The translations under genes and the position numbers were made by a program. A stretch of DNA of 64,000 nucleotides. Origin: Pocillopora damicornis (lineage: Eukaryota). Position 1 is the first letter of the stretch, and each line of letters opens with the position of its first letter. The notes under the pieces are model-generated. The model was not told where the DNA came from and made no database searches. It saw only the letters and a program-made list of their open reading frames with translations. The stretch covers positions 496,001-560,000 of the forward strand of contig NW_020845410.1 in assembly GCF_003704095.1 (NCBI RefSeq). Direction: 5' to 3'. Positions 12,549 to 42,900 of the stretch are shown in pieces.

Positions 12549-13360
12549 TTTGACGTTTTGGCCGGCTTTTTTGTGTAATTCAGATTACTGACGGCGTTCA
12601 AAGCAAACAGTCTTTTTGTATTTGTTTCCTTAAACTGAAATTTTTGTCAATCAATCTCTAATGAGAGTAAATGATACTCTTGTGAGCTTGAGTCAGCTAA
12701 TGCTGTTGTTTAGGAGTTGAAAAAGTTTCGGGCAACTTTTCTCAAATTTTTCAAGCGTCGTCAAGCGACATACCTATCATTATAACTCACTTAGCTCTCT
12801 GTTAAGCATATAAACAACTCAGACGTGCGTTAAACAGTGCATGAAACGGAAGGGTCATTGAGCTGCTGGAATTCTTTTGTTAGATGAATAAAAGAGATTT
12901 CGCAATTCATTCGTTTAATTACCATAACACAAAAAGACTTATCAACAACTCTTTCAATATCAGAAAACAACCCCTAGACGAAGCAGTTCAGGTTTGCATG
13001 CTCGAAAGCTTTCATCTGCCGACGTGTTTAGTGATACAGATAACACGCATTTTTACAGATTATTGCGTCAGGGCATAATTTTCTGTTAATTTCTAATTTT
13101 GTTTTTCTCTAAGCCTGGAAGGAAGTTAGGTAATGGCTTTGGATTTCCTAAGCGACTACCCGCTGGTCAAAAGCCCCGCAGAAACTTTGTCTTCCGTGTT
13201 TTGTTGCTCATGATAAAAAACATTAGTCACAAAAAATGAGAAAAACTGCTTTAGTTTTCTGCTAAAGTTTTTCAGTGTGCAATAAATGCCGTATCAACAT
13301 CCGTTGAAAGTAGAAAATGTTAAAGGGACCCAAACCGTTTCAGACCTCTCTCGTGCATAG

Positions 13361-16644: not shown

Positions 16645-18909
<2,265 letters not shown>

Positions 18910-21900: not shown

Positions 21901-21979
21901 CGTGCGGTTTGTTTGATTCTTTCCCGCATTCGTGCTACGATTGGCCAGCTGTGTAAATAAATAACAGCCACGCCTTGTG

Positions 21980-24900
21980 TTATTTCCGTCTTATCTTCAT
22001 AACTACGGGTCCGTATGGCAATTTTCTAATCAGCTCAAGTACATCCACATTCGCCATGTATGCAACCTTTTGTCCATTCACTTCAATGATTTCGTCCCCA
22101 GGCTTCAGAGCACCACTCCGCCCGGCCACGCTTTCCTTGAACACATACCTCACATGAATCGGAGCATCACCATAGAGCGAATCCTGACCCCCACCCAAAG
22201 AGAACCCTAATCCAGAGGCCCCCTTTTCGAGCGTTAATTCGGTCACAGAGGGCCCATGAGGCACTTTTTGCAGTCTTATCGGTCCACCATTGGAGAAGAA
22301 TCTCTTCTTTAGACGATCGAAGGTGGAGTGTTCTCCATTATGTTTCACCACATCTAATGGAATTTTCTCTAGGGTTGGCGGTGTGGTATTGTTTGAGTTG
22401 GCCATGTTTTTCTTCTTAGTCAATTCTTCCTTCGTAGGCCAAGCATCCGAATCAGAGGTAATTTCTTTGTTAGGACTTTTGTTTCGAAGAAGAGTCATCG
22501 TTTTAGATTGTTGTCTGTGTCCTAATGGCCGGCTTACTACAAGAGTAACCCGCTCAGGAGTGTTTTTGAGAAGAGTTAAGGCTTCTAAATTTGTCAATCC
22601 TTTGAAGGACTTGCCGTTGACAGACAATAGGATATCTCCCTTCTTGATATGTCCATTGTCAGCTGTGACACTGTTGGAGAGAATTTGCCGCACCTAAAAA
22701 AAAAGAGACGGTCGGAAAGAGCTCACGATTTTACTACCACATGGCTTATAGAGCTAACTTAAAGCACTCTAAGGTTCCAAAAAATTTAATTATCTCATTG
22801 ACAGTCCACCGTGTAACAAAGAATGACAACGACAAGGCTTTGTAAGCTCTAGCTCTAGCTCTAGCCGGCGCCCGCCAGCACGTCACTCGCACCGAGACAG
22901 GGAATAACGGAAGAGGGAAGGAATGAATTAAGACGGTAAAGTGTCACACTCTGCAAAAGGAGACATAGAAAAGAGTGGAGTATGGAAAAAGGTCGATAGA
23001 AGGCGGGCGTGAGGAAGGGAACACAGTAACGAGAAAAATAAGGAGATGAGGAGGAAGGAGTGCTGTAGGAAAAGAAGAACCAGAAGAGCCAGGGAAAAAA
23101 GAAGGAGAACGATAAGGCTGTTAGGGAGGAATTAGAAAACCATATGCGAGAATACAGAATTATAATAAACAAGGCGTTCATGAGGAAGCAACGAACAAAG
23201 GTTAACGTGTTATTCAGATTGGCAAACAAAAGTTTGCGAGTAAGAAACAAGAAAGTGCGAGATGAGAGGGGTGATACTGGGAACGACATTGATACTCACC
23301 ATGATGTCATCATGAGGTGTGTCCACTCCCCCAGTGACACTCAGTCCCAAGCCTGCACGGCCATTTTTCAAGAGTTCTACGGTAAACACCTTAGCGTCGT
23401 CACTGCTGACCGCCCAAGTGACGCTCTTAGTGACAGGTTTGACTTCCTCTTCATCCTCGGTTGTCGTGGAGTCATACTCACCAGGAATACCATCAATAAT
23501 AGTCACAGGAACGTCATCCTGACGAAGGGTCAGTGTCGGGCTCTCTGGCTCCAGGTAGGCGGGGATGTAGTCATCAGAATCATCAAACGAACCAGATGGA
23601 GAGGCTGGAGAGGAATCATTATTAAATGACGCCCCAAAGGACGAAAGGCTTATCAATGACTTAGGGCGTTGGCCCCTGTCAAGAGGTGGGCTTAGGGGCA
23701 GATCTGACGCAGTCTTTGAAATTGTGCTCGATTCACGGGCGGAGGATACGATAGGTTCTTCAGCATCTGGTACACGCCTTCCCTCTGCCACTAGTTCAAT
23801 ATTATCACTTCCATTATCCTTCTTTCTTGCCACAGTGAGTTTCACCAGGGGTGGTGTGTTCTTAAGAATGTTCAAAGCCTCACTATGAGTTACTCCCACA
23901 AGACAATTATCGTTGACCTGTAACAGTTGGTCTCCAACTCTGAGTCGGTTGCAGTTGGCGGCTGGAGAGTTGGGCTGAATATTTTTTATATACAGCATGC
24001 CTAGATGGGTGTCCAGACCTCCCACGACCATTAAGCCAATAGATTTCTGTTCTTTAAGAAGCTGTAATCAAGGAAAAATAAATCAATTAGCCATCTTCGC
24101 ATTGCTGATTTAAAAGATTGAACAAAGTTAGTGTCCGTCATTAAACAACGATTTCATTTCCCTAAGGTAATAGTTTTGCTTTATCACACACCAAGCATTT
24201 TCCACGTTCACAACACAAGAAAGAACGTAATTAAACCAATCCCTACTTTAAACTCGGAAGTAGTTAAAAGCCATTTTCGAGTTGTTGTTTCGACCCAAAA
24301 TTCACTCCTTCCATCCATTACCCTGTCACTCCTTCTTCCATTCCTGTTAACTTTTTGAAAATAAGATTTCGATCCACGTAACAGCAAAGATTACTTTTTG
24401 TGACAAATTTAACCTTTACAACAACGATACTCACCTGCACCTCTAGTATTCCTTCCTCAACATCCTCCTCCTGGTTCCTGCTGTCGATAAGCTGCTGAAG
24501 GTTTCCGGTGTGCCAGTAATCCGCCTGCCCAACTTTTCCTTCAGACGCTTGACCTGTGAGTGAGTCGGCAAGAAGCTGAGGTAAAGAGGACGACCTTCTA
24601 CGGAAAAAAGGAGGGGGACGCTTGGTAACAGGAGTTGATCGCTTCGTCTCCTCATCAATAATAGAGGGACGCTGCATAGGAACGTCTCCAGCGGAGAAAC
24701 TAGCACTTCTAGCCACTTTATTACCATGCAAAGGTTGGCCCGAATATTCTTGAGTCGAACTGCAAGTATCTTCCCATTCAGAGGAAACGTCTGAACTATC
24801 GAAGTCGTCGGTACTATGTGCATTCACCTCATGACTGACATTCTGTGTAACAACTGGTTCTGCTCCTTGTGACAATTGTGGATAATCATTGTATTCATTC

Positions 24901-27900
24901 AGGAGAATTTGTGAAGGTGATGGATCAGTGTTTTGTTCCCATATCTCAGGGTTATTCAAATCTTCATTTTTGTCAACTTCCTGAGCGTTCTGTCTTGACA
25001 GTGTAAGCTTGTAGGGGTTACCAGTAGTGTTCAGGTTCAGGTCAGTAGGGACTGGAGGTAACGGTTTGGTTTTTCGAGGCTCTTCATTGTGCAGTGCTGG
25101 CGCAACTACATCATAAGTGTCCTCTGCAGCACCCTGTTCCGCTGGAAATACGTCCTCTCGTTTTTTACTTTTACCGAGAACAGGAATTGGAGGTAAAGGT
25201 TTGGCAGTAGGTGCACCAGTTGTTCTTGGCAGGTCTTCGTTTCCACAATCAATGCTCTTGTTTTGAACAAGCAAATCTATGGGCGGAGGTGCTGGCTTAA
25301 AATTAGGAGGACCCGGGGATACGGGAGAATCTGATGTTTCATCTCCTGTGGTATCATTCTGTACAGTGGCTGGCTTCAAAGATAAAGGCGGTGGGGGAGG
25401 TTTGAATCTAGGAGGACCCGGTGAATTGGGACAATGTGGTGCTGTACTAAAGTCGTCCTTCTCAGCAAGGCTTGAACTGGCTTGTACTGCCAGCGGAGGT
25501 GGTACAGCCTTAAAATTTGGTGGACCAGGCGATGGCAAAACATTACTGTCCTCAATGGCTTTACCTTCAGTGTCAGAGTCAAGATCCTCAGTTATTAATG
25601 GTGACGTTTTCATTCTTTCTTTGCTAATTTTCTGTTTAAGTTCGTCCATAGTTTCTTGTTGTTGTCTACTGTGGGTACCGACAGACTTCAGGAAAGTGGG
25701 CTTTTTTGGAACAGGAGGTTTATAAGGAGATTTCGTTGGCAAGTTATCTTTGACGGCTTTACGCTCCTCATATTCAGCTGTTATCAAGGCGCTAGTGTTC
25801 GGTTGTTTTTCACGTTTCGGGGAAGGTGGCCTGTTTGCAAGGGATGTATCCACACCCGCATAAACATGAGATTCCGTCACATCATCATCGTCAGTGAACA
25901 AACTTACACCTTCAATATCAATTTCATATTCCTTCTCTTCATGATCCAAATCAGCATTCTCACTACAAGATTCATCTTGTTCTATTGAACTGCCATCTTC
26001 AGCTTGTTGAAAATTTATTTCATTTGTCGCCACTTCAGGCCTCATGTCTTCGTCTTTTGTTGTCAACACACCAAATTTGTTGTTGTTGTTCCTTTCTACA
26101 TAGTTTTTCATCTGTGTGGATAGATCACTTGATTTAAAAGTAAATGGCAATGTTTGTGAGAGAAATTTAGTTTCATTGAATATTGGTTTTTCAACGTCTT
26201 CATGAACCGGGTCTTTTACCCCAGCATCTTTCTTTTGTTTACCCAAAGGATCCTTTTTTGTCGTCGGTGGAGGGAGAGGTGGACTGGACCTCCTTGATCT
26301 GGAAAATAATCCTCTTGGAGGTGACACAGATCGACTCCTGTTCTCTCCATCCTTTGGCTTATCTCGGTTCTTGCTTCTACTTCTACTGCGAAAGCCAAAC
26401 AGCTTCTTGGTCCAGGATCGCGATCTTTCACGTCCGACAGGATTGGCGTCAAATGAGGTGTCCGGTGATTGCAGATGGTCGGGATCAGCTTTTTTGTCCT
26501 TACCTTTATGACCTCTTGAGAACAGTTTCTTCGATGTTTTCTCCTTCACTGGAGACGATAGTCTTTCTTGTTCTTTCTTGAGTTTCTGCGTTGATTCTTG
26601 TGGCGGAGAAGTTGCTCTAAGTTTAACATCAGGCTTAGAGGGAAGCACAGGTATACCCCCTGGAAGTGATTTTCGAGGGGCGCCACTCGTCTTACCAGGA
26701 GGTCTTGAAGGGATAGGAGGAGCTGGCCTCCTTTGCTTAGTGAAATTCTCTGCCGAATCTTCACCTTTAGTTGGTTGCTTGAGTAGCCTATCTTTTGGTT
26801 TGAAATGTGTTGCGTTGCTTTCTGTTCGCCCTTTCAAATCAAGTGGAGGATAATGAAGTTCTGACTCTGGATTTGCTTCTGTCGAATTGATCGACGAACT
26901 TAAGTTCATGGGTTCCAAATCAGGTATTCCACCAGAGCCCGTGTCTGAAGATTCCTCTAGTGATGAAAAGGCGATGTTGGTCTGGCCTAGGCCTTCTGTT
27001 GACATCATAGAATAGGTGTGGCCATGTGTCTCTTGTGACGTATTAACTGTTGATCCTTCCTTACTTTGTGAGGATTTTGTGTCCAGATTTGACATTTCCG
27101 TGGACAATGATGGTGGCTTGGAGGATGATGAGCTTCCTCCTTCACTGTCCTGCTCACTGCCAGAGTGTGACAAATCTTCTAAAGTCAATATCTGATCCAA
27201 GAAAGCAAGCTCTGCTTCTGCTGCTCCCGCCTCTGACCAAAGCTCCATTTCTGGAGGCAAAGGGGGTGGGGACATTGCATCAGACGAATCTGTGACCGCA
27301 ACTTCATCTTCACGAGGAGTAACATCTTGCTTCAAGGAACCGTCTGCTGCGTGGTCTGTCTCGTGTACAACAGGGAATTTAACGGACACGCCTCTAAATT
27401 CAGGTATGGATCCTTCAGCCTCCATCTCTATCACATTTCTTCGAAAAGACTTCTTCTTTTTCTTTGGAGAGGATTGAGATGCATTCACAGATGATGATTT
27501 GGCTTTATCTTCTTCAGAGGCTGAAAGCCCTGGACTGGTTTTAACTTTCACAGCTTGTAAACCATCTCCAAAACTTTCCAAACTTTCCATTGTGAGAGGT
27601 GAAATCCTCGGTGGAGGGGGGGCTGGGGGTAAGCTTTCCATGTCATCTTCGGGTGGCTCATCATGCGTCAATGAATGGGCTTGATTATCATCGCTTGAAG
27701 TTATAGGAGCAACAAAATCCACCTGACTTGGGTAAGCTGGCGATTCGTGGAGTTCATCGCCTTTACCAGAGGAACCAGATTGCTCCGATGTTTTGCTTCC
27801 TCTTTTTGATCTGATTGGCAAGGATAATGTCCTTTTCTTGGAATTCTTTCGTTCTGGTTTGACAGGGTGTGGTAGAGGACTGGTGATGTGTGTAAGTTGT

Positions 27901-30900
27901 GTCTCTCCACCTGACGATGGGACCGATTTATCAGATTCAACAGACCAGCTAGATGACATGTTGACTTGAGAGCGAGGTGGTGGAGGTGCAGGAGGAAGAC
28001 TCGACATGTCATCATCTAAATCATCCAGTAGCTGAATAGGCGCGTCACTAAAAGCATCTGGTATACCAAATATGGAAGTATGTTCATGAGAGGGGGAAGA
28101 TAATCCAGATTCTGCCATAAGATTCGTGCTTTCAAGATTTGGTAAATGACTTGATGATTCCCGATCAAACCAACAAGAAAGAAGTGGCGACGAAGAAGTC
28201 GAGGAAACTGTGTCCTGACTAATAACTTGTCTTCTTGGTTTAGGAGGTGGCGGACCTCTAGGTAAGCTTGGGAGACTTTCAAGCTCGTCATCAAACAAAC
28301 TTGGTGGCTTGATTGGACTTTTATCCTGTCCATTCCACGACAAGGACTCCAAAGCAGCTGCATCTTGCACAAAAGAATTGTTCATGAGCTCCAAGGGTTC
28401 TTCTTTATGAATGCTTTCGTTTCCTATATTATCTCCAAACAATCTAGGAGGTTTCATGGGTGCCTGTTGTTTTAAGTTCTCAGTAAGCTGTTTCTGCTTT
28501 TCTTGTGAACCGGATGGTATATCGGAATTGCCATTAAAATACTCCTTCTTCTGAACAGGATATGAGGGGGGTGATTGTGCATCTTGACTGAATAGCTGCG
28601 GAGGCTGTGGTGCTACTGTGTTTGCTTCCTCCACTTCAGAATCGAAAGATAACGCAGATTCAAGATTTTCGTCAACAAAGTCCTCAAAATTGGCTGGTGG
28701 GTTCAAAGATAAGTTTTCTACAATGTCTTCCGTTAACAGTTCAGGTACTTCACCTGAATAATCTTCTTCTTCTTCTGCGTCATCTGTCGGTAATGGTGGA
28801 GGAGGACTAGATGGAGGAAGATCATCAAATTCAGTTCCTTCCAGTTCACTGCCTTCGCAACCTTCTGCTGCAATTAACTCATCAGTAAGCTCTTGGGACA
28901 GAGTTATAGAAGTAACACTTTCTTCAGGATCTGGTATATGATTTGTTGTAGGTAAGTTTGAAACTGGTCCACTAAAAGTTTTTGATGTTTTCAGGGAGAT
29001 AAGCTCACTAGAGATGTCCACCCAAGGTGTGTAGGCTGCCACACTTGACAAAACATCTGGTACAGATTCCCGGTCTGCTGAGCTCATTTTGTCAGGTATC
29101 TCGTCAAGTTCACCCTTTTCCTTCTGAGATGAGACTTTCTCCTCAAGTAATTCTGTCGGTTTCGGTGGTTTAGGTCCGGCTTGGGCCACAATTCTCACAT
29201 CTCCCCTTGGGCAGTTCTTGATCATATTATGGACATCTTCAAAGGCCATTCCTTCTAGGGGGGTCTCGTTAATGGACAAAAGAAAATCTCCAACCCTGAA
29301 ATGAAAAGCAGACAAGACGCTTTCGTAACCTACACGTGCTAGTATATGATATAATGCAGGGGTGAATTTCCGCAGTACAGTGATTTATCGATATCCTAAA
29401 ACTACCTATTTCTACCTTGAGCATTCACAAACCATTTTCACCTATCGCAAGCAAGTAAAGGGATTTATCTTATTTTGCTTTGTTCCTGCTGCAAAAAAAA
29501 ACGTCTTAAGTAAGCAGAGAAAAGCAAGCAGCAAACAGTGCGCCATGTGAAACAAAACAAATTATGATAAACAGTCCTTCTTCGGTTTCTCATTATTCTT
29601 ACCTGATATTCCCATCTTTTCCTACTAGGCCAAATGATGAAACATCTGACACAATGACTTTCCCCTCCTCTGTTAGGTCCACTTTAAAGCCAAGGTTTCT
29701 AAACTTCTTCTGATAGATAATAGCAAATGGAACATTCTCATCTCTTCTACCAGCAACTGGTTTCACATCAACGTCAATTTTGTGTTTAATGATAGATGGT
29801 GTTGTCATTTTCTTCGTATTGGGGCCTTTAACTGGGGAAAGAAGACCTTTATCGACTCCAAATTTAGGTTTAGCTGAAAGTTTTTCCAAATCCAGGTTTT
29901 GTTGTTCGTGGCCACTTTCCTCTGCAGGAGATCCTGTACTCGTCTCCAACAATTTCTCTGAAAAAGTGTCCTTTGTTTTCATAGTCTCTGATGGTAAACT
30001 AGGTTTGCAATTTCCTGACAACGACGTAGCTTCTGTGCTGGTAGTTTGTCCAGATATAAACTCATCATCGTTTTCGTTTGTATTCAAATCGTTGCAAGCA
30101 TCAAGCAAAGACTGAAAATCCCAACCCGTACCCGTTTTATTACCACGGAAACAAGCTTGGTTAAGACTAATACTGGATTCTGGTGAGATCTCGTCGTCTT
30201 GTATGTTGTTGCTTTCATGGCGATCAGCCCTGAAGGGGTCTTGCTCCAGGAATTCCTTCATTCTTGGACTAAGAATAGGCGGTGGAGAAACAACGGGAAT
30301 TGGTGATAAAGGCAAGACATCGTCAATTGGTGGTGGAACTGGTGGAGGAGGGGGAGAAAACGATGGAAGAGCAATAGACAGATCGTTCTCTAAAAGATCG
30401 TCTGCATCCAGTAATGGCGGGGGTGGCGGTGAAGAAGGCAGTTCTGGTATATCCTCTTCAATATTTCTATCTTCATTACTTCTTGAATGAGGTTCATCTC
30501 GACTTTCTAATTTTTTCAATTCCCTGCTCCACTGAGACTTGCTAGGAGATACAGCTTTTTCCGCGCAGGGCAACGTTTTGGCCTCTTCTCTCCTCGACGA
30601 CGATGATAGCTCACCGTGTGTTCCGCTGTCTTGAGCCAAAGTATAATTTTGACCAGATGATAAATCGGACTTCCATTCACTAACAGGACTTGAAACTCTC
30701 TCCTGAGGATCTTCTCCTTCCCGTAATATCACAAACGTGACAAGTTCGGTTGGCTTCTTGAGCAACTGCAATGCCATCGAGTGAGTGACACCCTTCAAGG
30801 ACACGCCATTTACTGAAACAAGTTTATCGCCAGTTTGTAGCTGTCTATCTTGAGCACACACCATACCAGATTGTAGTCTACGAATCTGGAAAAAGGCCAG

Positions 30901-33900
30901 AACATACCTTAAATACCAACCTTAACTCGCGGGGAAAACACTGATCTAACTGGGAGGCTAACTATTTTCGTGAAACACTTTGCTCTGGATTCCTAAATTC
31001 TTCTACATTTTTATAGCTGCAAAACTCGAATTCGAAGCCATTAGCTAACAAAATCATACGCATTTGGTGCTACTTTCTTTTTAAGCCATGGACATGTACG
31101 GGACATAGAACAGGATTCACAGAGAAAATAGTTCGTGCTAAAGGCTTAAAACAGCGGTTAAGCTGCACACGCATAGTTTTTCTGATTGAATATGGGCAGT
31201 GAGAGTACGAAGCATGGTTAGTATCACCTATCTTCCGAAATCATAAACAATCATGTACACTGATTACAGTTCCACTGCTATTACCTGGAAATACCCCTTG
31301 AGATTCCCATAGCTTGGGACCAAAGAAAGACCAAGCGTGGAGTTAGCTTCCTTCTTTATGTTTATTTCCACTTTCCTGTAGCCAGACGGAATTATCAGAT
31401 TGTCCCCCAATTGGTCTTTAACTTTCTCTGAATTCTTATTTGTTAAGTATTTGCTTGTGCTGATGACATCTGCGACTGGTTTAATCTGTTCTTTAAACGG
31501 TGATTTTTTGGTACTTCGTGCTTCTTCTTCTTCGTTCTCCTTACTTCTCTCCTGATCGTCAGAGCTTCTTACATCTTTAATTCCATTATGGTCTTTTTTC
31601 TCTGCAATATATTCTTTATGTGGAGTATCGCTTTCCTTTTTCGCCTTAACACGCCCGGAGGATGGTACTTTATCAGTTTTGTCAGATGACGGTGACCTTT
31701 CTTCCTGTGTCCCAGGTTTAACTTTACCCCTACGGCTCGACCTTCGCTTACTATCCGGAGGTTTGGGAAGAGGCGTAAGGTCTTGTGGGACAGTTTTGTC
31801 TGATGGCTCATTACTCTTGTTTGCTCTTTGATTAGAGTCCATTCCCTGGAGAGTCATCTTGGACCTTCTAATTTTCATTTGTGTTGAACTTGGTAGATCT
31901 CTGAAGATCTTGATCACATCTTCTTGGTCCATTCCTCTGAGGTGGGTGCCATTGACTGCGATAATTTGATCTCCTGCTTAAAAAAATCTTATTATCAGTA
32001 AACTTGTCTACTCACGCTCGAAACGTCAGCTTTAGACACCCTTTACGGTGGATAATTAACATTTTCAATTCAGTTGATAAAACCAAATTACGTATAGGAT
32101 CTGTTTCGGACTGTCTTACAAGTCTTTATCTTAAAGTTATGTTGGAAGCTTTCTTTCCTTTTCCATTTCAAGGTCTCTTTATGACAACTATATTCAAGGG
32201 CTATTTTTATCCTGGGGACCTTCTCCATTCAGGAGTCACAAATATTGATCTAACCGAAGATAATTTCATTTTAGTCCTCTTTACAAGGGACACATCCTAC
32301 CAAAAGTAGAAGCCTTGGTGTATCAATTCTACGTACCAGAGAAATCTGCTCTTAAACTAACGGGCACAAAATTTCATGCCGTGTAGTTTACTGAAGATAG
32401 TTCTCTAAATTTGTAATTTTTGGAATTTGGACAATGAAATCATTGAAAAGAATCATACTTACCGAGTTTTAGCCCCACTCCCCTAGAGCCTCTTGCCAAA
32501 GCAGCAGATCCTCCTTCAGTTACACTTTTAATTGACACGCCCTCAGCTATGGTGTTCCCACGAGACTTGTCGACTGTGACACCCATGCCAAGTCCACCTA
32601 CCAAGAAAAAAACCACAGCGGTGAGTTGAGATTCTCCTTGGGAAGTTTTGATGAGCCTCTCTATTCGAAGTTTATCTGGGGACTTGGCTTACCAGTAGGT
32701 TGCTTTATAATTGTGTAAATGTCTTCCAGAAATTCGGCAGAATCTGTGACAATAAATAATTGAACATGACATGGTCAGAAAAAAGTTCATATAATTAGTA
32801 ATAAACAAATAAATTATTTTGCAACTGGTCTTATGACCTGTTTAGTTGGCATGTAAAGGGAAGGCAAGAGGGAAGATGTAAAGGGAATGCAGGGAACAAC
32901 AGAATTGATACCAATGATCACACTTGGCACTCAATTTGACTATCCCTTCTTTCACCATTTGGTACTCTGGTTATAAATGCTACTGGTCCTATCCCAAGAA
33001 GAGGCTATAACCTCAAATGTGACTTATCTTTATTTCAACAGTTGTTTGTCTCAGTTAATTCTTTTTTTAAGATGAATACTTCAGGTGCCTTCAAAATAAG
33101 TCTTACCAGGTTCATGAGTGAAAACATCGTCGTCTGACTCTTGAACTGTTTGAGACTGATATGAAAATGGAACAGAAATATTAAACTGGAAAACTAGGTT
33201 TCAATACTAAATGTTCATGGTTCCTTTCAGGCTTTTTGTAGTAATATATTGTGAAGTATTTTGGTCCCTGTAAAGAGAAACAATAACTTAAAGGACAGAC
33301 GTCATAATTTACTAATTAGTGACAACAATAAGAGTTCAGAGAGACAATCACCATTCATTAACCATTTACCTTCTTTTTCTTGTTTTGTTCGACAGAATGT
33401 GGAATGAGGAGATCACAAGATGAGGAAAGACTTGTAAAATTGTCTGAGATGTAAAAAACAAATGAAATGCAAAGAAAAAGTAAATTAAGGGAATAACCTA
33501 CAGATAAGCAGGATATGAAAAACATGTGCAGGACCATCAGTTACAAATGTTCTCATTCAAAAGGAGTACCATCTTCTGATGCATGCCTCATGCACATCTG
33601 TGATTATTGGCAAGACTTAGTAGTAACTCTAATGTTCAAAAACGTGGATAACCTTTATAAGTAGACATTCTACAGAGGTTAGATCACAGTATTTTAGGTA
33701 CTGTTGTCCTTCAGCAGTTTACTTGTTTTCACTTTGAGTTTGTACTGCCTCCTTATGTATTTTCGTTCTTTCTGAGTTGTGATTACCTTGTCTTTGGTTC
33801 TCCAACACTCAAATGCAAAGTGCACTATTGTAAATCTGTAGCTAACAGTTGATCAGGGCTTAAATTGTCTAATAATAAACCATCCGCTGATTAAAGCCTC

Positions 33901-36900
33901 CACACCCTAGAACATTAGTATGCAAATTCTCCATACAGTTCTCTATACATTTCCTTGGGTCCTAACAAGGTGAACAAGCTTTACAGGCAAAAGCTGCTTA
34001 GTTGGTGATCCTTTCCTTTATTCTCCTGACCTTAATGTTTGATTCAGGGGTGATATTATAAGGAGAAATATGATGCTGGTCACTCTAGGTGTGAAAGGGT
34101 TCAAACCACTCACCACAAGACTCAGAGCTTTCCGATGCACCAGAGAGTGTTGACGCAGTTCCTGAACTCTTTGATTTCCCTGACATCTTTTTATCCAGGA
34201 ACTGACGCTCACTTTGAAGCTTAGTGAGTTCATCGTTAAGTTGTAGAGGTAACTTGTCAGATGCATTGTTCTGCACAACTTTAAAATATACTTTTCCTGG
34301 AGGAGTTTTATCCAGAATGTTGTATATATTTTCAACTGACAGTCCTTCTAGTTTCTTGTCATTAACTTCAAGGAGTTGATCACCTTTTCTGTAAATGAAA
34401 ATAAAAAATAATTGAGGAAACTTCAAATTGTGAGCACTAAAACTTCCTTTAATTATAAGTTAACACCATCAGGAAATACTCAATTAAGGTGTTATGTTAC
34501 AGTTTTTTCCAAAGTTATTTTCAGCCAGCCATAGGAAAAAAAAATAGTAACCAGCAAAAGGTTGAGATTTGTCGCAGATCAAGACAAATATTTTATTGTT
34601 TTGCCTGATTTAAGTAGCTGACCTTCCACTGATGTCAATGGAGGGTTCAGGTAAAACAAATAAACAATTCACCTCAATCTCCCATCATTATCTGCTGGTG
34701 TTCCTTGAATAATGCATTGAACAAAGATTCCAGGTATCTGAGTTGATGGATGTTGTTCTCCCAGACCAATTCCCAAGCTGCTTCCAGGTTCTGTAAGCCC
34801 AAATAAGATCAACTGATTCACAAGCCTCTGAACAAATAAATGAATTTGGTTCTAGGGGCATTACATGCCTCATTATTATTGGGCGCTACTTCAAAGTAGT
34901 ATGGCCTATGTTCTGCTGATAATTGTAGGGCAGAACAAGTTTACTTCATGAACAAAAATGAAATACAGGGGAATGTCCTCTACATCTGAATCAAACTTTA
35001 TTCAGAGAATTCTTTAGTCTTGATTGCCTAATAATATAATTCTAAGTATATCTTTCAGTTTGTATGTACATTATGATTGGTCAATTTAGTGGGCTGCATT
35101 TCACTGTAAAGCCCTCTAAATTCAGAAATACTGTAAAGTACAGAAATTTGTCTTTTTCTCCCTGATTTATAACCCATGTGCATCTGGCTTGGGCCATAAA
35201 TCCAAGTCGGAACACTTGCGCTGTAACTCAAAGTGCAGACCAAGAAAACAAGCTTAGTGATGGGTACTAATGATAATCTCTAGTGAGGTGAATTCAAAAG
35301 AGACAATTTTTTTGTGTGCTCATAATAAATCATTGTCTTACATACTTATATAATGCCCTGTGAAGTTTGACCTTGCTCTTGAATAATATAATTACCATAA
35401 ACTGAGAAAAATATATCTGTCAATTACCTCTTTAACAGAATATTTTTCCAACAAAATATTTATGAACCAATTATCAGTCCAAATAAAATTTTGCTCTTTC
35501 ATGACCATTTCAATGATTATTTCTGATACAACAAACCATCTGCAGCTAACCTATAATAATATATTACTAAATAAATCTCTCATAGAGCATTTAGACTAAT
35601 ATCCTTCAGAGAAATTATCAACCATGGAATGAAACTTAAATGTGTATAATTTTGGAACTAATTTGTATATGTTTTTTTAAATAATAATTAAAGGTCTAAA
35701 GAATATGTTATTCTTGTTGAAAGTGTTGAGGAAATGAAACACAATAACACAATTATTTTGTGGAAGCGTGGATCACAAATCAAAAGTTATCTTCAACAAA
35801 ACTGTCAGTTCACAAGTACTAAAGGATATGCAGACAAAAACAAAAATTCGTACACACCTTTATAAAGAACAATTTCACTGATCTTGTCTTTCTGGCTTCG
35901 TTTCTGACGCAGCTTTCGAAACATTGTTGGAGATGATGAATTGCTAGAGCTGGTTGACTCTGCTGTCACATCTCTGCTGTTTCGACGAGATCTTCCTGGC
36001 GAATTTCTGGGTGTTGTAAATGTTGATGCACTTGGAGCTCCAGGACTGTTTCTCCGCACTTTCAAAGTTACAATTCCTCGGCGAAGATTCTACAAACCAA
36101 GGATAATATTTACTGCTACAGCGAGTATTGTATAACTTTCACCTGGTGAGTAAACTTTAGTAATGGATAGCACAACAGATTGAGAAGCTTAAAATAGGAA
36201 TTATTTTTAATTATTCTTTTACAATTTGAACTTGAACTGCCAATTGAAAGTCAGAACAAAGTTGCCAAAGATGGTATATTTTTGAAACAAATTCTCAACA
36301 ATGAGGATTTTAAACTGTAACCCTGAATGAATTGAACTGTGTTCAATCTGTGTTAGCAATATTCTTTTGTTTGCTTTGATAAAGCACTTGATCAATAACC
36401 CAGGGGCAGGTGAACATTGTACTGTTTAATATTTAATCATAAATAGAAGCATTTGAAAGCCCACAGTCAGAAAGATGTCTTGTGTCATTGAACATAAAGA
36501 ATAAGTGATTTGTCAAATATTTTAGCTGTGCTCAAATCCCCAGATTTTCACAGTTATTTTTTTAACTTTCTATTTTAATTAAAGAGACAATTTCACACAT
36601 TACCCATTGTAGTAATGTATTCAATTAAGCCATGGAGAATTTATTTTTCTCCAGGAACAAACAAATGATTTTATTTTGTTGGAATTGTGAACAATAGCCA
36701 GCAATTTTCATGTAAATTTATCCCCAAACATAAGAAGATATATCATATCAAATTTGTGAGTAAGCAATACTTACTTGAGTTTATATTACACATGAAAATG
36801 ATTAACTTGGATTCAGTGATCAGAGAATTTGAACAAATCAGTACTTTTTGGGGGGATGATCAGGTTACTTTTCATCAATATAAAGTTTTCCAATTGTAAT

Positions 36901-39900
36901 AAAATAAAGTTGCTTCTTGCTGATTTTCAAACTTACTTTTGGCTATGAAGAACAGATAGCTTAAATTTATTTTTTCCAATATCATGTCAACTTTGAGCTG
37001 ATAAATTTGGAAAATAACAAACTTGGCCTAACATTTTTAAATAAGTGAAATATTTGATAAACACTTAATTTAGTGAATTCAATTCAATAATAAAAGTAAT
37101 CTTCAGAAACTCATAACAATGTTTGAAGTTCAACCATTTATCAGAAACAATTCTAGCGAGTGTTTAGCAAAATAATTCTTGATTTGTCTTTAAATAGACA
37201 AAAAGGTATTATTTTGTCAGCTAGAATTAACAAAAAATTCTCTCAACTTTTCCTAAAGTCAGATAAATCATCTCTCTCAAACAGAACAATATAATATCAA
37301 CTTTTAAGCTATTGATTAACAGAAAAAAATATCATTTTGTTATTTGTAGTTACCTTCATTAACTCAATGTGATGAACTAGCTTAAATCTACTTTTTGTGT
37401 TGCCATAATTACTGGGTATGGGACAAATTAAGTAATCATGTTATAATCTTTTAATTTTTTTATCAAATCTCTCCTGTATTCTGAGAATTCTATCAACTTA
37501 CACTGGTTATACAACCCAAAATAATCACAGATGAGTTCAAGCATTTGAGAGTAACCTTTTAAGCTATTCACTCCAAAGGGCTCAATCTCAATTTCCACAC
37601 TGTCAAGAAAACATTTCTCAAAACCTTAGCTAAAAAAATCTGGTATCAAATCAAACAGTATCCACTAGTTGATAGTTTTTCGTTGTCTGGTCACCTTTCT
37701 GCTTGAAAATGTATTGATATCGAAAGAATTCTGTTTTGGTCACCTCTAGGAGTGAAAGGGTCAAAACTTGCCTGTTTTGACCTCTGAAAGATTTAAACTC
37801 TATTTTATTCTTTACCTTAAAGGTGTCCAGGGCTTGTTGATGAGTGAACCCTTCAAAAGATGTTTCATTGACTGATAACACCTCATCACCTTTGATTTGA
37901 TAGCAATAAACAATAAAGATTAATTTGGTAGGCAGATTATTAATTGAACCCTTTAACTCCCAGATCAAATTTGTAATTTTCCTTACTGTCAGCAAAACAA
38001 TTCTTATAGTTTTAGTTTGGAGAATTTAGTATTGGATCAAATAATTATCTCCAAATTGATATATTTTTTTTATTCTCATCACTTATCTGGTTGATATTGT
38101 ATTGATATTGTAAGGAGAAATTCTGTCTTGGTCACTCATGGGAGTTAAAGGGTGAAATAAAAAACAAAGTTATACTGTAACAGTATTTGAATAACCTTCC
38201 AAAGTTGTTGGGGTGAGAATTTGAAAATTACTTTAAAATCCAATTTTCTAAAAATTGCTCTTTGAGAATGAATAACAAGTTACCTTTTCTCATCCTTCCA
38301 TCAGCTTCTGCTGCTCCACCAGGGAGAATATTCCGTACATGCACAGCCATATCACCATGAGGTGAGCCTTTTCCTCCAACAATAGTGAACCCAAGACCTT
38401 TTCCATTCATTCCCTTTACCAGAACAATGGTAACAACTTCCTCTTTCATGGTTTTACTGGTTCTTCTTGGTGAGGTCTCATTACTCCCTTTTTTCTTTGC
38501 TTGCGGCGAGTCCCGATCATTACTACCCACAAAATTTCGGGGTGTGGGCATAGCTTTAGTCATTACATTAGCAGGGGGATCCCCCAGATATCGTGCAGAG
38601 AAAGCAATTCCCATACCTCCTGGAGACTGAGGTCTTGGCAGGGAAGGTGAAATTTGACCAGGTTCTAGGCGCATTCCGCTTTTTGTTGGTTTTTCTTTAG
38701 GAGGTGAATTATTCAAGAAAAGGTTTGGTGAATTTCTCTTTTTTGAGGCATCTATAATTGGAGGGGATAGAGATGGTAGCTTTCCTAGTAAAGATTTTGT
38801 TGAAGACCCCTTGGAGAGTGGTTTATCCTCTAAAGTAACTGGCTCACTTTCTAAACTTTCTTCTCCTTTTGAAAGCAAGACATCCTTTGTGTCTGACTTT
38901 TCTTGTCCATTAGAACCATCAGATGAGGAAGACCAGTGTCTGCCATTAATCAGCTCTTGTTCATTTCCGTTTAACAGAGCATGATTTCCTTCATTATGTG
39001 ACTTATCCTGCAAGTCAGTTTCTTCAATTTGATTATCTTTCTGTGGATTTAAATTTTCTACTATTTTTGAAGGACTACTTTCCATTGATTGTTGCAAAAC
39101 TTTATCTTGTGACTCTGTGGTCCCTTTTTCAAACTTTTTATCTGCTTCCTTGATTTTCTTTCCCATGTGACCAGAGGACATTTTTCTACCTTTCTGCACT
39201 AAACTTTCTGCAGATTTTGCTTGAGGAAGGCTTTTTGAACCCTGCATTCCAGCTCTATCTGTTACATTATCCAAAGAACTTTTTTTCAATCTTGATGCCA
39301 TTGCCTTCTTCTCCAAAGTAGACCCCCTTACCTTTGAGAAAACAATAAAACAGAAATAAAACTTTAGCACTTGTGATAATGGTTTGCAGTATTCAGATTA
39401 CATTATACTTAATACAGAGTCTCTCTGCCAGGGAACTTTTCCTGAGAATATTGTTTGTTACCTGAGTTGAAATGACTAGTTGAATCAGCTTTGGTGATGC
39501 TCTTAGTAAGTCAACAGCCTCCTGTTGTGTTACTCCTATTAAGCTGTGGCCATTGATCCATAACAGCTCATCACCCTCTTTAAGGCGACCATCCCTATAT
39601 ACAAAGAAATCAATTTTCAGTTAAAATTAAACTTTCTTTGTTAGTAATATCATAAAAGTTGATCATTTACTCAGATTAATATTGTGGATTAAAAAAACAA
39701 TTCCTCTTGGAATTATTTAAAACTAGGTTAATTTTTGTTTTTCTCTATTAAGAATGACTTTAAGAAAATTGATGACACTTAAAAGATTAAAATTTGGTGA
39801 TTAACAGCAGATTTCTCCCATTCAATTCACCATCTTTATCAAGTTAACTTAAAATTTTCCTTGTAATGCACATATTGTTCTGTTTCTGTTGTTTGTTTTG

Positions 39901-42900
39901 TCCAATCAACATTTTGTTATACACTTTAAATTCAACTTAATTTGTACTTTGTATTATTCTGGACTGAAAATGACAGAAGAACTGTTGAAATATGTTTTTT
40001 GTTATCTTAAAAGTGTCATTAATTTTCTTAAAGTCGTTACATATCTGCTTCTATCCAGACCTATTTAAGAATGATAGTAGTTCATCTTGAATAAAAGAAA
40101 AAAAGGAAAATACAAACTACTATCTATAACTATATATAACATCTATAAAATAAGGCATCTATTTTCCTTACTTTACAATAATATATAATTTTAACTATTT
40201 GTATGACTCAAATGCAGCTTGGGTAGTTATCATTTGTATGTAATGCAATGTGTAAATCTCAACTTCTCCCCCTGTTGTTTACTTAAACTTACATTTATGA
40301 GAAGAAATATGATACAAATGATAAATATTAGAGGGTTGATTTTTTAGGGTTAAACTGCTTTAAATCTGGCCTCCATTCTTACCTCAATTATTGGGTTGTA
40401 AGCGCATGCAATATTGAATTTGGTTTTTAGACATTTAGTTTTTAGATATTTAGTTCTTAGTCTATTGAGTTTTTTGTCTTGGCTGTCACTGGTTTGTTTT
40501 CTTGACTCAAAGTTTGAAATATTGCATCTGTAAGAATCCAAGACTGTTTATTTATACTACATAACACTGATTTACATGCAACTAAGTATTCTCTGAAATA
40601 TAAAAATATTGAGTACATCATCATGAAACAATGACGTCTTAACTTTGTGCTTGAACTAGGTCAAGGTCAGGTTTAAATACTTTGCAATCAATTCTTTGAA
40701 AAATGAAGTTGCTGAAATCAAATTCAAAACTCTGAATTCCGGTAAATCTTTAATTATTGGATGGTACATTTACCCCATCATTTTCCAAAACAAGCTCAAC
40801 TAACAGTTACCATACTCAATTTTTATATTAACATGTCAATTGAAGGTTTTTCTGTAAAAAAAAAGGTTGATTTTTTTTGTTAATCTGGTAAATTATAGAA
40901 AAATTGTACTCTCTTAGTGTCAAACCTAAAAATCATGCACAAATGAATGTAAAATTTGAATTACTATAAAAGTTTAAAAAGTCAATTAACATTTGGAATC
41001 TCATGCCACACTTGGTTTAAACTGTAAACCATTACTGACAGTTACATTAATAAATACAAGTGAAATACTGTACCTTGCTGCAGCTCCACCAGGGCTCACA
41101 TCAGACACAAAGACACCCTTCTCTCCTGTTTCATGGTTGAGTTTCATCAATATTTGTACTCCAAGTCCGCGGCTATCCTTTAAAATATGTATCTTCTTTA
41201 CTCTATTTTTCTGCAATAAAATATCAAGTATACAACACTCTTACAGAATTGTCAAAAAATGCATGGCATGAAAACAATATAATAAATTATCTAAAATACA
41301 AACGTTTGTTGTTTTACATAACAATTTCATATCACTTTCAGACATGATAAAGGAAATATGAAATAGTTTTAGGTTTGTGGATGTACCCAATTTTTCTGTA
41401 ATTTTATTGAAGTCTTTAAATATCTGCATACAGTGTATACCATACTTTACACAGCAAAATATGTCTTTGCTTTAACTTCATAAATTATAAGCAATAAGTT
41501 ATTAATGACAGGATGTTGTTTAATTTACTAATATTGTTATTGCTCAGAATATCAATTATTTTCCTGCATGTGCACCAATTGCAAAGTGAGTGTAGTAACA
41601 AGTTATAATGAGTGAAAGTTAAATTCTGTATATAGTACTGAGCTTCACCAGCCTGCAATATCCACATTCTCACTTAATGAGCCAATATCTCATTTTTCTT
41701 GACATAAGTATGACTATATCTAAAAAAAATTACCCCTTGAAGAGACACTAGTCTGTTACAGGTTACATTAATTCCTGCTTTCAGTCAGGGTAAGCAGTAA
41801 CATAGGGATACTTATTACTAACAGTACATGTTTGAAGCTAGCACTCTCCGAATAAATGGTCTAGACCCAGGGGTAACAGTTGATGGTGTAGTCTGCTTGT
41901 CCAGGTGAGTGTAAACAAGAAAAGGCCTCTATTATAGCAGCTAATAAGGTCAAAACAATAGTCACTATTGCTAACAACAATCCCTCTAAGCACCTCTTCC
42001 ACGAGCACAATCAGACAACTTGTTCAACAGTTATTACTTTTATCAAATCTAAAGTTAGGAATCGTATAAAGCTGCAAAGAAGAACACATCTCAAAATTGA
42101 CTGATTAACATATTTAAAATTCTCTGTTTTGAATATCTAAGATCAAGCACTTTCACCAATCTGTTAATTGCAGGTGATAAATGGTAAGTTATTTTTCTGC
42201 TCTTGATCTGCAAAAGAATTTTAAAAATTTCACAGTAGAAAAGAAGGAATTAAAATCCTATTGAAGTTGACTTTTGTATTTCAACCTCAAATCAATCTTT
42301 AGATAATTTTTTTAAAAACAAACCTTTATAACAGTAATGAAACAAAATTACTCTTCTACCCTATTGATAGTAGGGTCAAACTTGAGAATGTCAAAATAAA
42401 AATTTGTTTCATTTAACTTACGGATCCAGAACTCTCAGAAATATTTTCAAGTCTTGGAACAACACCATTCTTTACAGGTGTAATGTTTCTCCCAATAGGA
42501 CCACGGAGAACTTTCATTTTTAATTTTCCACTCCTCAATGCACTTCCTAAGTACCACCTGAAACAAATCACTCAAATTAATATTAAATACGCGTTTATAA
42601 TTCAAATATCAGCTTATCTCAAAACCGAGACGTTTAAAAATATTGTTTGTGAATAGCAAATGAAATACACAACAAAATCATCTTTTCTAATTTTAGCGAC
42701 ACTATTTCAGTGATTTCTCTTATGGAAATTACTATTTAAAGGCTGAATTTGAAAGGAGAAAAGAAATTATTAATTAATGGCTTTCTTTGTAGTCTAGTTC
42801 TTATCACGCGTTGAACGCAAATGCCGAGAACAGAAACACCTTACTCGGTTTGCGATAAAAAACGTAAACAAAGAGGTCACACAATGCAAGCCAATACAAC

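What the first reader, a model, noticed from the sequence alone, without database searches (positions are those of the whole stretch)
28293..28700. Cluster of PPxxF(xD) Homer-ligand motifs in the giant PDZ protein encoded next to Homer
Seen: within about 135 aa of the disordered giant exon are PPANFED (28700-28686), PPQLFSQD (28604-28590), PPRLFGD (28451-28437) and PPSLFDD (28307-28293). Elsewhere are PPPFFR (24617-24600, a full PPxxFR) and LPSSP (30441-30427, like the second Homer site described in TRPC1). Three of the four clustered motifs end in FxD, as does the motif in the alternative Homer exon. Inference: a multivalent Homer-binding 10-PDZ scaffold (Shank-like role, potentially condensate-forming) is encoded about 11 kb from Homer itself, i.e. 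a physically linked scaffold-adaptor pair in an early-branching animal. Caveat: the protein is proline-rich, so some matches are expected by chance.
Basis: partly seen in the sequence, partly recalled or inferred. Interest (0 to 1): 0.75.

Follow-up and report, generated by a model that had tools for sequence, protein, structure and literature searches.

The report
Conserved Homer-type motif cluster, coral PDZ scaffold
A giant ten-PDZ scaffold protein of a stony coral carries a small cluster of short proline-phenylalanine motifs, kept in corals and sea anemones, that look exactly like docking sites for the adaptor protein Homer, though binding itself has not been tested.

Summary
All four PPxxF motifs, plus PPPFFR and LPSSP, sit at the stated coordinates in a minus-strand exon (window 24435-29299). 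RNA contigs from three studies show that exon is transcribed and spliced.

The cluster exceeds chance: a cluster of 4 occurred in 5e-5 of residue shuffles and 8e-4 of shuffles that keep proline runs.

Conservation is the strongest evidence. All 34 homologues examined carry 2-4 clustered copies. These include named Stylophora, Acropora, Montipora, Nematostella and Actinostola proteins.
- Of 103 motif instances, 99 fit the published extended Homer1 EVH1 motif [PIALV]P..[FWY][^P][DN].
- In both sea-anemone proteins the three clustered copies are the only PPxxF in about 3,400-3,600 residues.
- Motif 2, PPPFFR and LPSSP are not conserved.

Context:
- The window's Homer EVH1 keeps its ligand-pocket residues.
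- The host protein is collinear with vertebrate PDZD2 at both ends. Eleven vertebrate PDZD2 proteins lack the motifs.
- Homer lies 9.4-11.4 kb away, but a GOLPH3-like gene lies between the two.
- Synteny elsewhere, co-expression and binding were not tested.

Multi-PDZ scaffolds that bind Homer are already published (PATJ/MUPP1, and Shank by recall). I file this as a well-supported predicted new member of a known kind. The scan had noted only the neighbouring Homer exon before (s1-777649).

The parts
21980..43576 (-). Whole gene for the PDZD2-like giant multi-PDZ scaffold. The extent comes from homology to the full-length Acropora and Stylophora proteins.
   Evidence: tblastn of P0067 and P0002 against the window. 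PDZ Pfam hits in the ORFs 29599-30864, 23210-24031 and 21980-22693.
24435..29299 (-). Giant exon, about 1,620 codons with no Pfam domain. It begins with the second half of a PDZ domain and carries all the motifs. Its 5' boundary is ambiguous by about 4 nt.
   Evidence: RNA contigs of X1, X2, X5 and X11 cover exactly this range and run on into 24032-24061 and 29607-29636. Frame open, 0 stops. No Pfam family.
28680..28706 (-). Motif 1, LNPPANFED. Across homologues only L(-2), P0, P1, F4 and D6 are conserved.
   Evidence: Per-residue conservation 0.85, 0.81, 0.41, 0.33, 0.96, 0.41, 0.93. Present in most homologues.
28581..28604 (-). Motif 2, PPQLFSQD. A lineage-specific extra copy with Q at +6.
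   Evidence: Among the 30 exon homologues it is present only in P0001 and Stylophora P0002. Conservation 0.36, below its flanks.
28431..28457 (-). Motif 3, MKPPRLFGD. The family consensus is PIKPPSLFGDD.
   Evidence: Conservation 0.97 against flanks 0.47, 98.8th percentile of all 7-mers in the exon.
28287..28313 (-). Motif 4, PIKPPSLFDDE. It is followed directly by LESLPSLPRGPPPP.
   Evidence: Conservation 0.96 against flanks 0.55, 98.2nd percentile. Recognisable in Nematostella, Actinostola and P0084.
27972..28016 (-). DDDMSSLPPAPPPPR, a conserved acidic-flanked LPPxPPPP island that resembles an Ena/VASP-type EVH1 ligand.
   Evidence: Conserved island, 0.92. Invariant columns in A1. Coordinates. 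Motif definition [FWYL]PxphiP from PMC11237882.
27606..27650 (-). EDDMESLPPAPPPPR, the second copy of that island.
   Evidence: Conserved island, 0.93. Invariant columns in A1. Coordinates.
24579..24617 (-). RPPPFFRRRSSSLP. The conserved part is RRRSSSLP, not the Phe.
   Evidence: Family consensus RPPPPMRRRSSSLPQL. RRRSSSLP is present in Nematostella, Actinostola, Montipora and P0084.
30427..30441 (-). LPSSP in the upstream exon. A low-information match that is not conserved in Acropora.
   Evidence: Translation. LPCSP in the four Acropora proteins, LPSSP in Stylophora.
10391..10549 (-). Homer EVH1 exon, residues 3-55 in Homer2 numbering. It includes W24.
   Evidence: WH1 profile hit. Best PDB matches are Homer2 and Homer1 EVH1, E=3e-23.
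8656..8817 (-). Homer EVH1 exon, residues about 55-101. It includes F74, Q76, W77 and G89.
   Evidence: WH1 profile hit. Best PDB matches are Homer2 and Homer1 EVH1, E=1e-18.
18442..18909 (+). Exon of a GOLPH3-like gene lying between the PDZ gene and Homer.
   Evidence: Pfam GPP34, E=4.9e-23. ORF listed.

Best explanation
The four motifs belong to a conserved cluster of short linear motifs. Family-wide there are 2-4 copies, usually 3, with the consensus [LI]-[KR/N]-P-P-[ST]-L-F-x-D-[DE]. The cluster lies in the long linker, apparently disordered, of a roughly 3,600-residue, ten-PDZ, PDZD2-like scaffold found in stony corals and sea anemones.

Most likely each copy docks into the proline groove and Phe pocket of a Homer EVH1 domain, as a class II EVH1 ligand (PPxxF). 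Homer is a tetramer carrying four EVH1 domains, and the copies lie 30-80 residues apart. One scaffold could therefore hold several EVH1 domains at once, which would raise avidity and cross-link scaffold and Homer into a network. This would resemble what is described for Shank-Homer (recalled) and PATJ/MUPP1-Homer.

Shown here: the motifs, their conservation, their fit to the published Homer preference, the transcribed exon, and an intact Homer EVH1 encoded in the same genome. Inferred: the binding itself, its multivalency, and any network or condensate.
For: **1. The motifs are real and exceed chance**.

**2. Conservation.**
- All 34 homologues examined have a cluster: 2 copies in 4 proteins, 3 copies in 25, and 4 copies in 5.
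- Motifs 3 and 4 score 0.97 and 0.96 against flanks of 0.47 and 0.55.
- In motif 1 only P0, P1, F4 and D6 are conserved, while the x positions vary.

**3. Fit to the published Homer preference.**
- Singer et al. 2024 (PMC11237882; sections 2.1-2.3, 2.5 and 3.1 read) give [fwyl]pp[PIALV]P..[FWY][^p][dn], with a preferred Leu at L(x)1-2PPxxF.
- Of the 103 clustered instances, 99 fit [PIALV]P..[FWY][^P][DN].
- Position +6 is D in 94 and N in 5.
- Position +5 is never Pro.
- Positions -2 or -3 are aliphatic in 93.
- The PSORS1C2 peptide containing APPLFED bound Homer1 EVH1 at 15 uM.

**4. Specificity within the protein.**
- The updated motif picks out only the three clustered sites in full-length Actinostola, Acropora and Montipora.
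- In Nematostella all five matches lie within residues 1585-1757.
- PPxxF occurs nowhere else in the two anemone proteins.

**5. The partner exists.**
- The WH1 scan of the genome found four EVH1 loci: one Homer, one Ena/VASP-like and two WASP-like.
- The Homer EVH1 aligns to Homer2 with W24, F74, Q76, W77 and G89 kept.

**6. Precedent.**
- PATJ binds Homer EVH1 through a PxxF motif in an inter-PDZ linker and reshapes Homer condensates (bioRxiv 10.1101/2025.07.23.666266, abstract and first Results section).
- A Homer-MUPP1/PatJ module is described in PMC12582288 (passages).

**7. Expression.** The exon is transcribed and spliced.
Against: - No binding, co-localisation or co-expression data exist.
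- In the human screen about 97% of sequences matching the relaxed core motif did not enrich, even against tetrameric EVH1. A pattern match alone is therefore weak evidence.
- Two of the three copies are constrained beyond what the Homer preference asks. Position +2 is S in 79 of 103 instances, position +3 is L in 78 of 103, and position +7 is acidic. This could reflect another reader or an additional one.
- Vertebrate PDZD2 lacks the motifs. PPxxF is absent in 10 of 11 proteins, and the updated motif is absent in all 11.
- The 103 instances share ancestry, so they are not independent events. My rule for assigning an instance to the cluster was set after seeing the data.
- Motif 2, PPPFFR and LPSSP are not conserved.
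Confidence: 0.6

Rival explanations
1. The cluster is a genuine conserved motif cluster, but it is read by a domain other than Homer EVH1. An unidentified reader would recognise the hydrophobic-acidic core S-L-F-x-D-[DE]. The resemblance to PPxxF would then be partial coincidence.
For: Positions the Homer preference leaves free are almost fixed in two of the three copies: S at +2 in 79 of 103 instances, L at +3 in 78 of 103, and an acidic residue at +7. About 97% of core-motif matches do not bind Homer1 in the human screen.
Against: In motif 1 the free positions really do vary while L(-2), P0, P1, F4 and D6 stay. That pattern matches the Homer preference, not an SLFxDD one. From memory I compared the motif with the clathrin box, AP-2 FxDxF/DPF, FFAT, LIR, KLC W-acidic, G3BP FGDF, PP1 RVxF, B56 LxxIxE and PP4 FxxP. 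None fits, but that comparison is recalled and is not a tool result. A text search for PPSLF, PPxLF and related strings returned 6 papers, none with a title or abstract opening about a binding motif; I read only the listing.
Confidence: 0.25
2. The conserved islands serve the scaffold itself. They could be intramolecular contacts with its own PDZ domains, or a folding or packing element, rather than docking sites for another protein.
For: The protein has ten PDZ domains. The islands are embedded among many other conserved islands, 26 in the exon.
Against: Copy number varies from 2 to 4 between lineages while the core stays the same. That is typical of repeated docking motifs and not of one structural element. 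Flanks are poorly conserved, and no domain model matches the exon.
Confidence: 0.1
3. The motifs are chance matches in a proline-rich sequence.
For: Proline makes up 11% of the exon. With proline runs preserved, the total count of 5 is only P=0.037.
Against: The cluster of 4 has P=8e-4 even with proline runs kept. PP.LF.D is observed 2-3 times against 0.005-0.014 expected in five full-length orthologues. The cluster is kept in all 34 homologues, down to 31% identity and into sea anemones.
Confidence: 0.03

Closest known systems
PATJ / MUPP1-Homer epithelial module (mammals)
   Same: A very large multi-PDZ scaffold binds the Homer EVH1 domain through a PxxF-type motif in a linker between PDZ domains. 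It recruits Homer and changes Homer network or condensate behaviour.
   Different: PATJ uses one non-canonical PKGF site and carries an L27 domain. The coral protein has 2-4 canonical PPxxFxD sites and no L27. It is collinear with PDZD2, not MPDZ/PATJ, at its ends. Binding has not been shown for the coral protein.
Shank-Homer postsynaptic scaffold
   Same: It has a PDZ domain and a long proline-rich region with a Homer-binding PPxxF. By recall it also has a cortactin-SH3 site of the KPPVPPKP type. The coral exon has KPPVPKKP, and Actinostola has KPPVPPKP.
   Different: The coral family has no ankyrin repeats, SH3 or SAM domains. Shank has one Homer site and one PDZ. This protein has about three sites and ten PDZ domains.
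Vertebrate PDZD2 / pro-IL-16
   Same: Collinear best hits:
- Acropora residues 148-245 match PDZD2 296-403.
- Acropora residues 527-759 match PDZD2 558-803, 40-41% identity across two PDZ domains.
- Acropora residues 3305-3576 match PDZD2 2504-2726.

The last PDZ's best single-domain PDB hit is IL-16. One Acropora record is named Pro-interleukin-16.
   Different: The vertebrate proteins are about 2,300-2,700 residues. In the 11 sampled there was no PPxxF cluster and none of the LPPAPPPP, RRRSSSLP (one loose match in 1 of 11), KPPxPxKP or PPxFK islands. No orthology tree was built.
Drebrin and other validated Homer EVH1 ligands (mGluR1/5, PSORS1C2 peptide)
   Same: They share the core and flank rules L-x-PPxxF-x-[DN]. 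The DBN1 peptide is LPEPPATFCD, and the PSORS1C2 peptide APPLFED binds at 15 uM.
   Different: Those are single or double sites in unrelated proteins. Here an array of three sites is conserved across corals and sea anemones.

Membership tests
Homer EVH1 (class II) ligand motif | Core PPxxF, or the relaxed form [PIALV]Pxx[FWY] | tested here: met
   Four clustered PPxxF in the window. All 103 clustered instances found in the 34 homologues have the PPxxF core.
Homer EVH1 (class II) ligand motif | Published flank preferences: no Pro at +5, D/N at +6, and Leu 1-2 residues before PP | tested here: met
   Three of the four window motifs meet the +5 and +6 rule, and motif 2 does not. Family-wide, 99 of 103 instances fit, and 93 of 103 have an aliphatic residue at -2 or -3. 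The rule is from PMC11237882.
Homer EVH1 (class II) ligand motif | Located in an accessible, disordered region | tested here: inconclusive
   No Pfam domain in the exon. Composition rich in S, P and E. Poorly conserved flanks.
Homer EVH1 (class II) ligand motif | Conserved above the flanking sequence in orthologues | tested here: met
   Motifs 3 and 4 score 0.97 and 0.96 against flanks of 0.47 and 0.55. Motif 1 is conserved at P0, P1, F4 and D6. Motif 2 is not conserved. The cluster is present in sea anemones.
Homer EVH1 (class II) ligand motif | A cognate Homer with an intact ligand pocket in the same organism | tested here: met
   EVH1 exons in the window align to Homer2 with W24, F74, Q76, W77 and G89 kept.
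Homer EVH1 (class II) ligand motif | Physical binding to the EVH1 domain that depends on Pro and Phe of the motif | not testable with these tools
   Needs BLI, ITC or pull-down.
PDZD2 / IL-16 family | PDZ domains collinear with PDZD2 at the N- and C-terminus | tested here: met
   blastp of Acropora P0067 against a panel of MPDZ, INADL, PDZD2, pro-IL16 and PTPN13 proteins. PDZD2 is the best hit, and collinear, for residues 148-245, 527-759 and 3305-3576.
PDZD2 / IL-16 family | Orthology shown by a phylogeny of PDZ domains | not tested
   No tree was built. The middle PDZ domains hit MPDZ, INADL and PTPN13 about equally.
Shank | Ankyrin repeats, SH3, PDZ and SAM architecture | tested here: not met
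   Pfam finds only PDZ families, plus a sub-threshold DUF6288 match, in full-length P0067 and in P0002.
MUPP1 / PATJ | N-terminal L27 domain followed by 10-13 PDZ domains | tested here: not met
   No L27 in P0067. The MPDZ and INADL hits carry PF09045. The coral ends match PDZD2 best.

The most novel reading that the evidence does not exclude
In hexacorals the PDZD2-like ten-PDZ protein may be a main partner of the single Homer. Its array of three PPxxFxD sites, flanked by Ena/VASP-type LPPAPPPP sites and SH3-type sites, would build a multivalent, condensate-like Homer network at synapses or apical junctions. That would be a Shank- and PATJ-like hub assembled on a different scaffold and lost or never gained in vertebrate PDZD2. 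The closeness of the two genes would then reflect shared regulation.
Probability: 0.15. Interest if true: 0.7.

Novelty: new member of a known kind. Interest (0 to 1): 0.45.

Why it matters
Homer is an ancient scaffold whose partners outside vertebrates are largely unknown.

A conserved array of three Homer-type sites in a PDZD2-like protein gives a concrete and cheap hypothesis to test in cnidarians, using peptides and a recombinant EVH1 domain. It bears on how Homer networks are built there.

It would also extend the recently described link between Homer and multi-PDZ scaffolds (PATJ/MUPP1) to a second PDZ family and to early-branching animals.

It gives PDZD2-like proteins, whose long linkers are uncharacterised, a map of candidate docking sites. 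These are Homer-type, Ena/VASP-type, SH3-type and 14-3-3-like sites.

It remains a sequence-based prediction.

Tried and rejected
- **Chance.** Rejected by shuffles and by conservation.
- **PPPFFR as a Homer site.** Rejected as a conserved feature, because the family consensus is RPPPPMRRRSSSLP.
- **LPSSP as a second Homer site.** Weak, since it reads LPCSP in Acropora.
- **Wider relatives of the linker.**
  - A word search with the full-length Acropora protein over the linker found only Montipora and Stylophora.
  - A profile search of 1.84 billion representatives found 7 proteins, of which one was new (P0084).
  - The linker is therefore recognisable only in hexacoral-like sequences.
  - Most homologues are unnamed ENA or Logan ORFs whose taxa I could not learn.
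- **Vertebrate PDZD2.** It has none of the motifs.
- **MUPP1/PATJ or Shank membership.** Rejected on domain content.
- **Other motif classes.** I compared clathrin box, AP-2, FFAT, LIR, KLC, FGDF, RVxF, B56 and PP4 FxxP from memory. None fits, but this is recalled and not a tool test.
- **Literature.**
  - 'PDZD2' plus 'Homer' gave 34 papers, of which 12 were listed; none of those has either term in title or abstract.
  - The gene identifiers gave 0 papers.
  - PPSLF-type strings gave 6 papers, judged unrelated from titles and abstract openings.
  - The supplements of Singer et al. (enriched-peptide tables and logos) were not open to me. They could show whether Leu at +3 or acidic +7 is favoured.
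- **Tandem repeats.** None at DNA level in 12600-29400.
Full report
**1. The observation**

- PPANFED at 28700-28680
- PPQLFSQD at 28604-28581
- PPRLFGD at 28451-28431
- PPSLFDD at 28307-28287

PPPFFR lies at 24617-24600 and LPSSP at 30441-30427.

The exon is 11% proline and 3% phenylalanine. Results of 20,000 residue shuffles:
- PPxxF: expected 0.62, observed 5 (P=4e-4).
- PPxxF followed by D within 1-2 residues: expected 0.09, observed 4 (0 of 20,000).
- A cluster of 4 within 140 aa: P=5e-5.
- With proline runs kept intact, the cluster still has P=8e-4. The bare count of 5 is then only P=0.037.
- These tests are post hoc.

**2. The exon and its gene**

Pfam finds nothing in the giant ORF and finds PDZ pieces in the flanking minus-strand ORFs.

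RNA evidence:
- Of the 18 runs listed as holding the stretch, 10 are on record as RNA, from 3 studies.
- I laid four of them (X1, X2, X5, X11; three studies). Each gave one contig of 8.3-12.7 kb.
- Each contig covers exactly 24435-29299 and then continues with letters that match 24032-24061 and 29607-29636.
- The exon is therefore transcribed and spliced.
- The downstream intron has GTGAGT...TTACAG. The upstream junction is ambiguous by about 4 nt.
- These are contigs, so they say nothing about expression level.

By tblastn with the full-length Acropora and Stylophora proteins, the gene runs from 43576 to 21983. The gene was searched exon by exon.

**3. Relatives**

- A word search with the exon gave 30 homologues, 100% to 31% identical. 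Stylophora pistillata LOC111340749 is among them.
- Cluster look-ups named Acropora proteins of 3,576-3,623 residues (A. palmata, A. muricata, A. cervicornis). One of them is labelled Pro-interleukin-16.
- Most other homologues are unnamed ORFs.
- Acropora palmata P0067 has 10 PDZ stretches and no other domain.
- A search with its C-terminal PDZ region added Montipora capricornis, Nematostella vectensis LOC5517610 (3,621 aa) and Actinostola sp. (3,345 aa, partial). After those came generic MPDZ, INADL and PDZD2 hits.
- A profile of the motif region (alignment A1) against 1.84 billion representative proteins found only 7 proteins. One was a new distant relative, P0084. It has the same order of islands.

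**4. Conservation of the motifs**

In the 30-sequence alignment:
- Mean weighted column conservation is 0.57.
- Motif 3 scores 0.97 (flanks 0.47), the 98.8th percentile of all 7-mers.
- Motif 4 scores 0.96 (flanks 0.55), the 98.2nd percentile.
- Motif 1 scores 0.67 overall. Per residue it is 0.85, 0.81, 0.41, 0.33, 0.96, 0.41, 0.93. Only P0, P1, F4 and D6 are held.
- Motif 2 scores 0.36, below its flanks. It occurs only in the window's cluster and in Stylophora.

The PPPFFR site has the consensus RPPPPMRRRSSSLPQL. The conserved element there is RRRSSSLP, not the Phe.

Sea anemones:
- Nematostella has exactly three PPxxF in 3,621 residues, at 1695, 1727 and 1757.
- Actinostola has exactly three in 3,345 residues, at 1967, 2001 and 2036.
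- All six are PPxLFxD[DE].

Tally over 34 homologues, namely the 30 plus Montipora, P0084, Nematostella and Actinostola:
- Copies per protein: 2 in 4 proteins, 3 in 25, and 4 in 5.
- There are 103 clustered instances, and only 13 PPxxF elsewhere in those proteins.
- Position +6 is D in 94 and N in 5.
- Position +5 is never Pro.
- Positions -2 or -3 are aliphatic in 93.
- Position +3 is L in 78, and position +2 is S in 79.
- The instances share ancestry, and my rule for calling an instance 'clustered' was made after seeing the data.

**5. Fit to what Homer reads**

I read these parts of Singer, Ramos and Keating 2024 (PMC11237882): abstract, sections 2.2, 2.3, 2.5 and 3.1, and found passages in 2.1, 2.8, 3.2 and 3.3. 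They report:
- Homer prefers L(x)1-2PPxxF and PPxxFx[DN], citing Li et al. 2019, which I did not read.
- Pro at +5 is a negative element.
- The updated motif is [fwyl]pp[PIALV]P..[FWY][^p][dn].

How the coral motifs compare:
- 99 of 103 instances fit the obligate core plus the +5 and +6 rules.
- In full-length Actinostola, Acropora and Montipora that pattern picks out only the three clustered sites.
- In the window's exon it is found 4 times against 0.44 expected, P=9e-4.
- A PSORS1C2 peptide with APPLFED bound Homer1 EVH1 at 15 uM.

Against this, the same paper reports that about 97% of core-motif matches did not enrich.

**6. The partner**

A WH1 profile scan of the whole genome gave four loci. 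By PDB comparison they are:
- One Homer, in the window at 10391-10549 and 8656-8817 on the minus strand (E=3e-23 and 1e-18 to Homer2/1 EVH1).
- One Ena/VASP-like locus.
- Two WASP-like loci.

The alignments show W24, F74, Q76, W77 and G89 kept. The mutants W24A and G89N abolish ligand binding in the paper.

**7. Family of the host protein**

In blastp of Acropora P0067 against a small panel, PDZD2 is the best and collinear hit for three regions:
- Residues 148-245 match PDZD2 296-403.
- Residues 527-759 match PDZD2 558-803, at 40-41% identity over two PDZ domains.
- Residues 3305-3576 match PDZD2 2504-2726.

The middle PDZ domains hit MPDZ, INADL and PTPN13 about equally. IL-16 is the best single-domain PDB hit for the last PDZ.

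Eleven vertebrate PDZD2 or PDZD2-like proteins were sampled. Ten have no PPxxF and one has a single PPIQF. None has the updated motif or the other islands, apart from one loose RLSSLP match. No tree was built.

**8. Linkage**

- The PDZ gene's stop codon is at 21980.
- The first Homer EVH1 exon ends at 10549, which is 11.4 kb away.
- The alternative exon noted earlier (s1-777649) is at 12415-12548, which is 9.4 kb away.
- Both genes are on the minus strand.
- Between them, on the plus strand, lies a GOLPH3-like exon at 18442-18909 (Pfam GPP34, E=4.9e-23).
- The two genes are therefore near each other but not adjacent.

**9. Comparison with what is known**

- PATJ binds the Homer EVH1 domain through PKGF in the PDZ5-6 linker, recruits Homers to junctions, and drives network-like Homer assemblies. 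Source: bioRxiv 10.1101/2025.07.23.666266, abstract and first Results section. The listing shows it also as PNAS 2026, PMC13389695.
- A Homer-MUPP1/PatJ module controlling junctional actin is described in PMC12582288 (passages).
- Shank-Homer is the classical case (recalled; mentioned in abstracts listed).
- A multi-PDZ scaffold docking Homer by a linker motif is therefore a known kind. What is new here:
  - the host family (PDZD2-like)
  - the three canonical sites
  - their conservation across corals and sea anemones
- I found no paper linking PDZD2 to Homer (listing only) and none naming these genes.

**10. Verdict**

- The cluster is almost certainly functional.
- Homer EVH1 is the best-fitting reader, at about 0.6.
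- The main rival is an unidentified reader of the over-constrained SLFxD[DE] core, at about 0.25.

Noticed in passing
window 28016-27972 and 27650-27606 (minus): Two near-identical islands, DDDMSSLPPAPPPPR and EDDMESLPPAPPPPR, are among the best-conserved parts of the exon (0.92 and 0.93). Their core is invariant in alignment A1, and they recur in Nematostella and Actinostola. They fit the Ena/VASP EVH1 motif [FWYL]PxphiP with acidic flanks. The genome has one Ena/VASP-like EVH1 locus (C1318).
   Followed up: partly
window 25721-25698, 26732-26706, 25202-25179, 25067-25044 (minus): Conserved SH3-type proline sites: KPPVPKKP, RRPAPPIPS, KPLPPIPV and KPLPPVPT. Actinostola has KPPVPPKP. By recall KPPVPKKP resembles the cortactin-SH3 site of Shank.
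   Followed up: no
window 25532-25281 (minus): Three copies of SPGPPxFKxxPPP, spaced about 35 residues apart. They are also present in Montipora (3 copies) and, in relaxed form, in P0084 (2 copies). The reader domain is unknown.
   Followed up: no
window 24602-24579 (minus): RRRSSSLP is conserved from corals to sea anemones, just before the last PDZ block. By recall it looks like a basophilic-kinase or 14-3-3 (RSxSxP-type) site.
   Followed up: partly
window 26426-26373 and 27221-27174 (minus): Two further conserved islands with no assigned role. One is the basic-hydrophobic RSRSWTKKLFGFRSRSRS. The other is the helix-like AEAELAFLDQILTLED, which is preceded by MSPPPLPPEMELWSE.
   Followed up: no
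window 18442-18909 (plus): An exon of a GOLPH3-like gene (Pfam GPP34, E=4.9e-23) lies between the PDZ gene and Homer, convergent with the PDZ gene.
   Followed up: partly
window 24100-24435 side of the RNA contigs (run X1, record 1): The X1 contig has 5,352 letters beyond the giant exon on the gene's 3' side. The remaining coding exons account for only about 1.5 kb. This suggests a long 3' UTR reaching toward the GOLPH3-like gene, or a contig that merges neighbouring transcripts.
   Followed up: no
window 28064-28044 (minus): IPDAFSD also fits the relaxed Homer pattern. In close relatives it reads DPF[ST]D, and it is lost in distant ones (alignment A1). By recall DPF is an AP-2 ear motif. Probably not significant.
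   Followed up: partly
G000 C2045:1241915-1242067 and C4004:328497-328849: Two separate WASP-like EVH1 loci in this genome. One of them is on the same contig as the window, about 680 kb away.
   Followed up: partly
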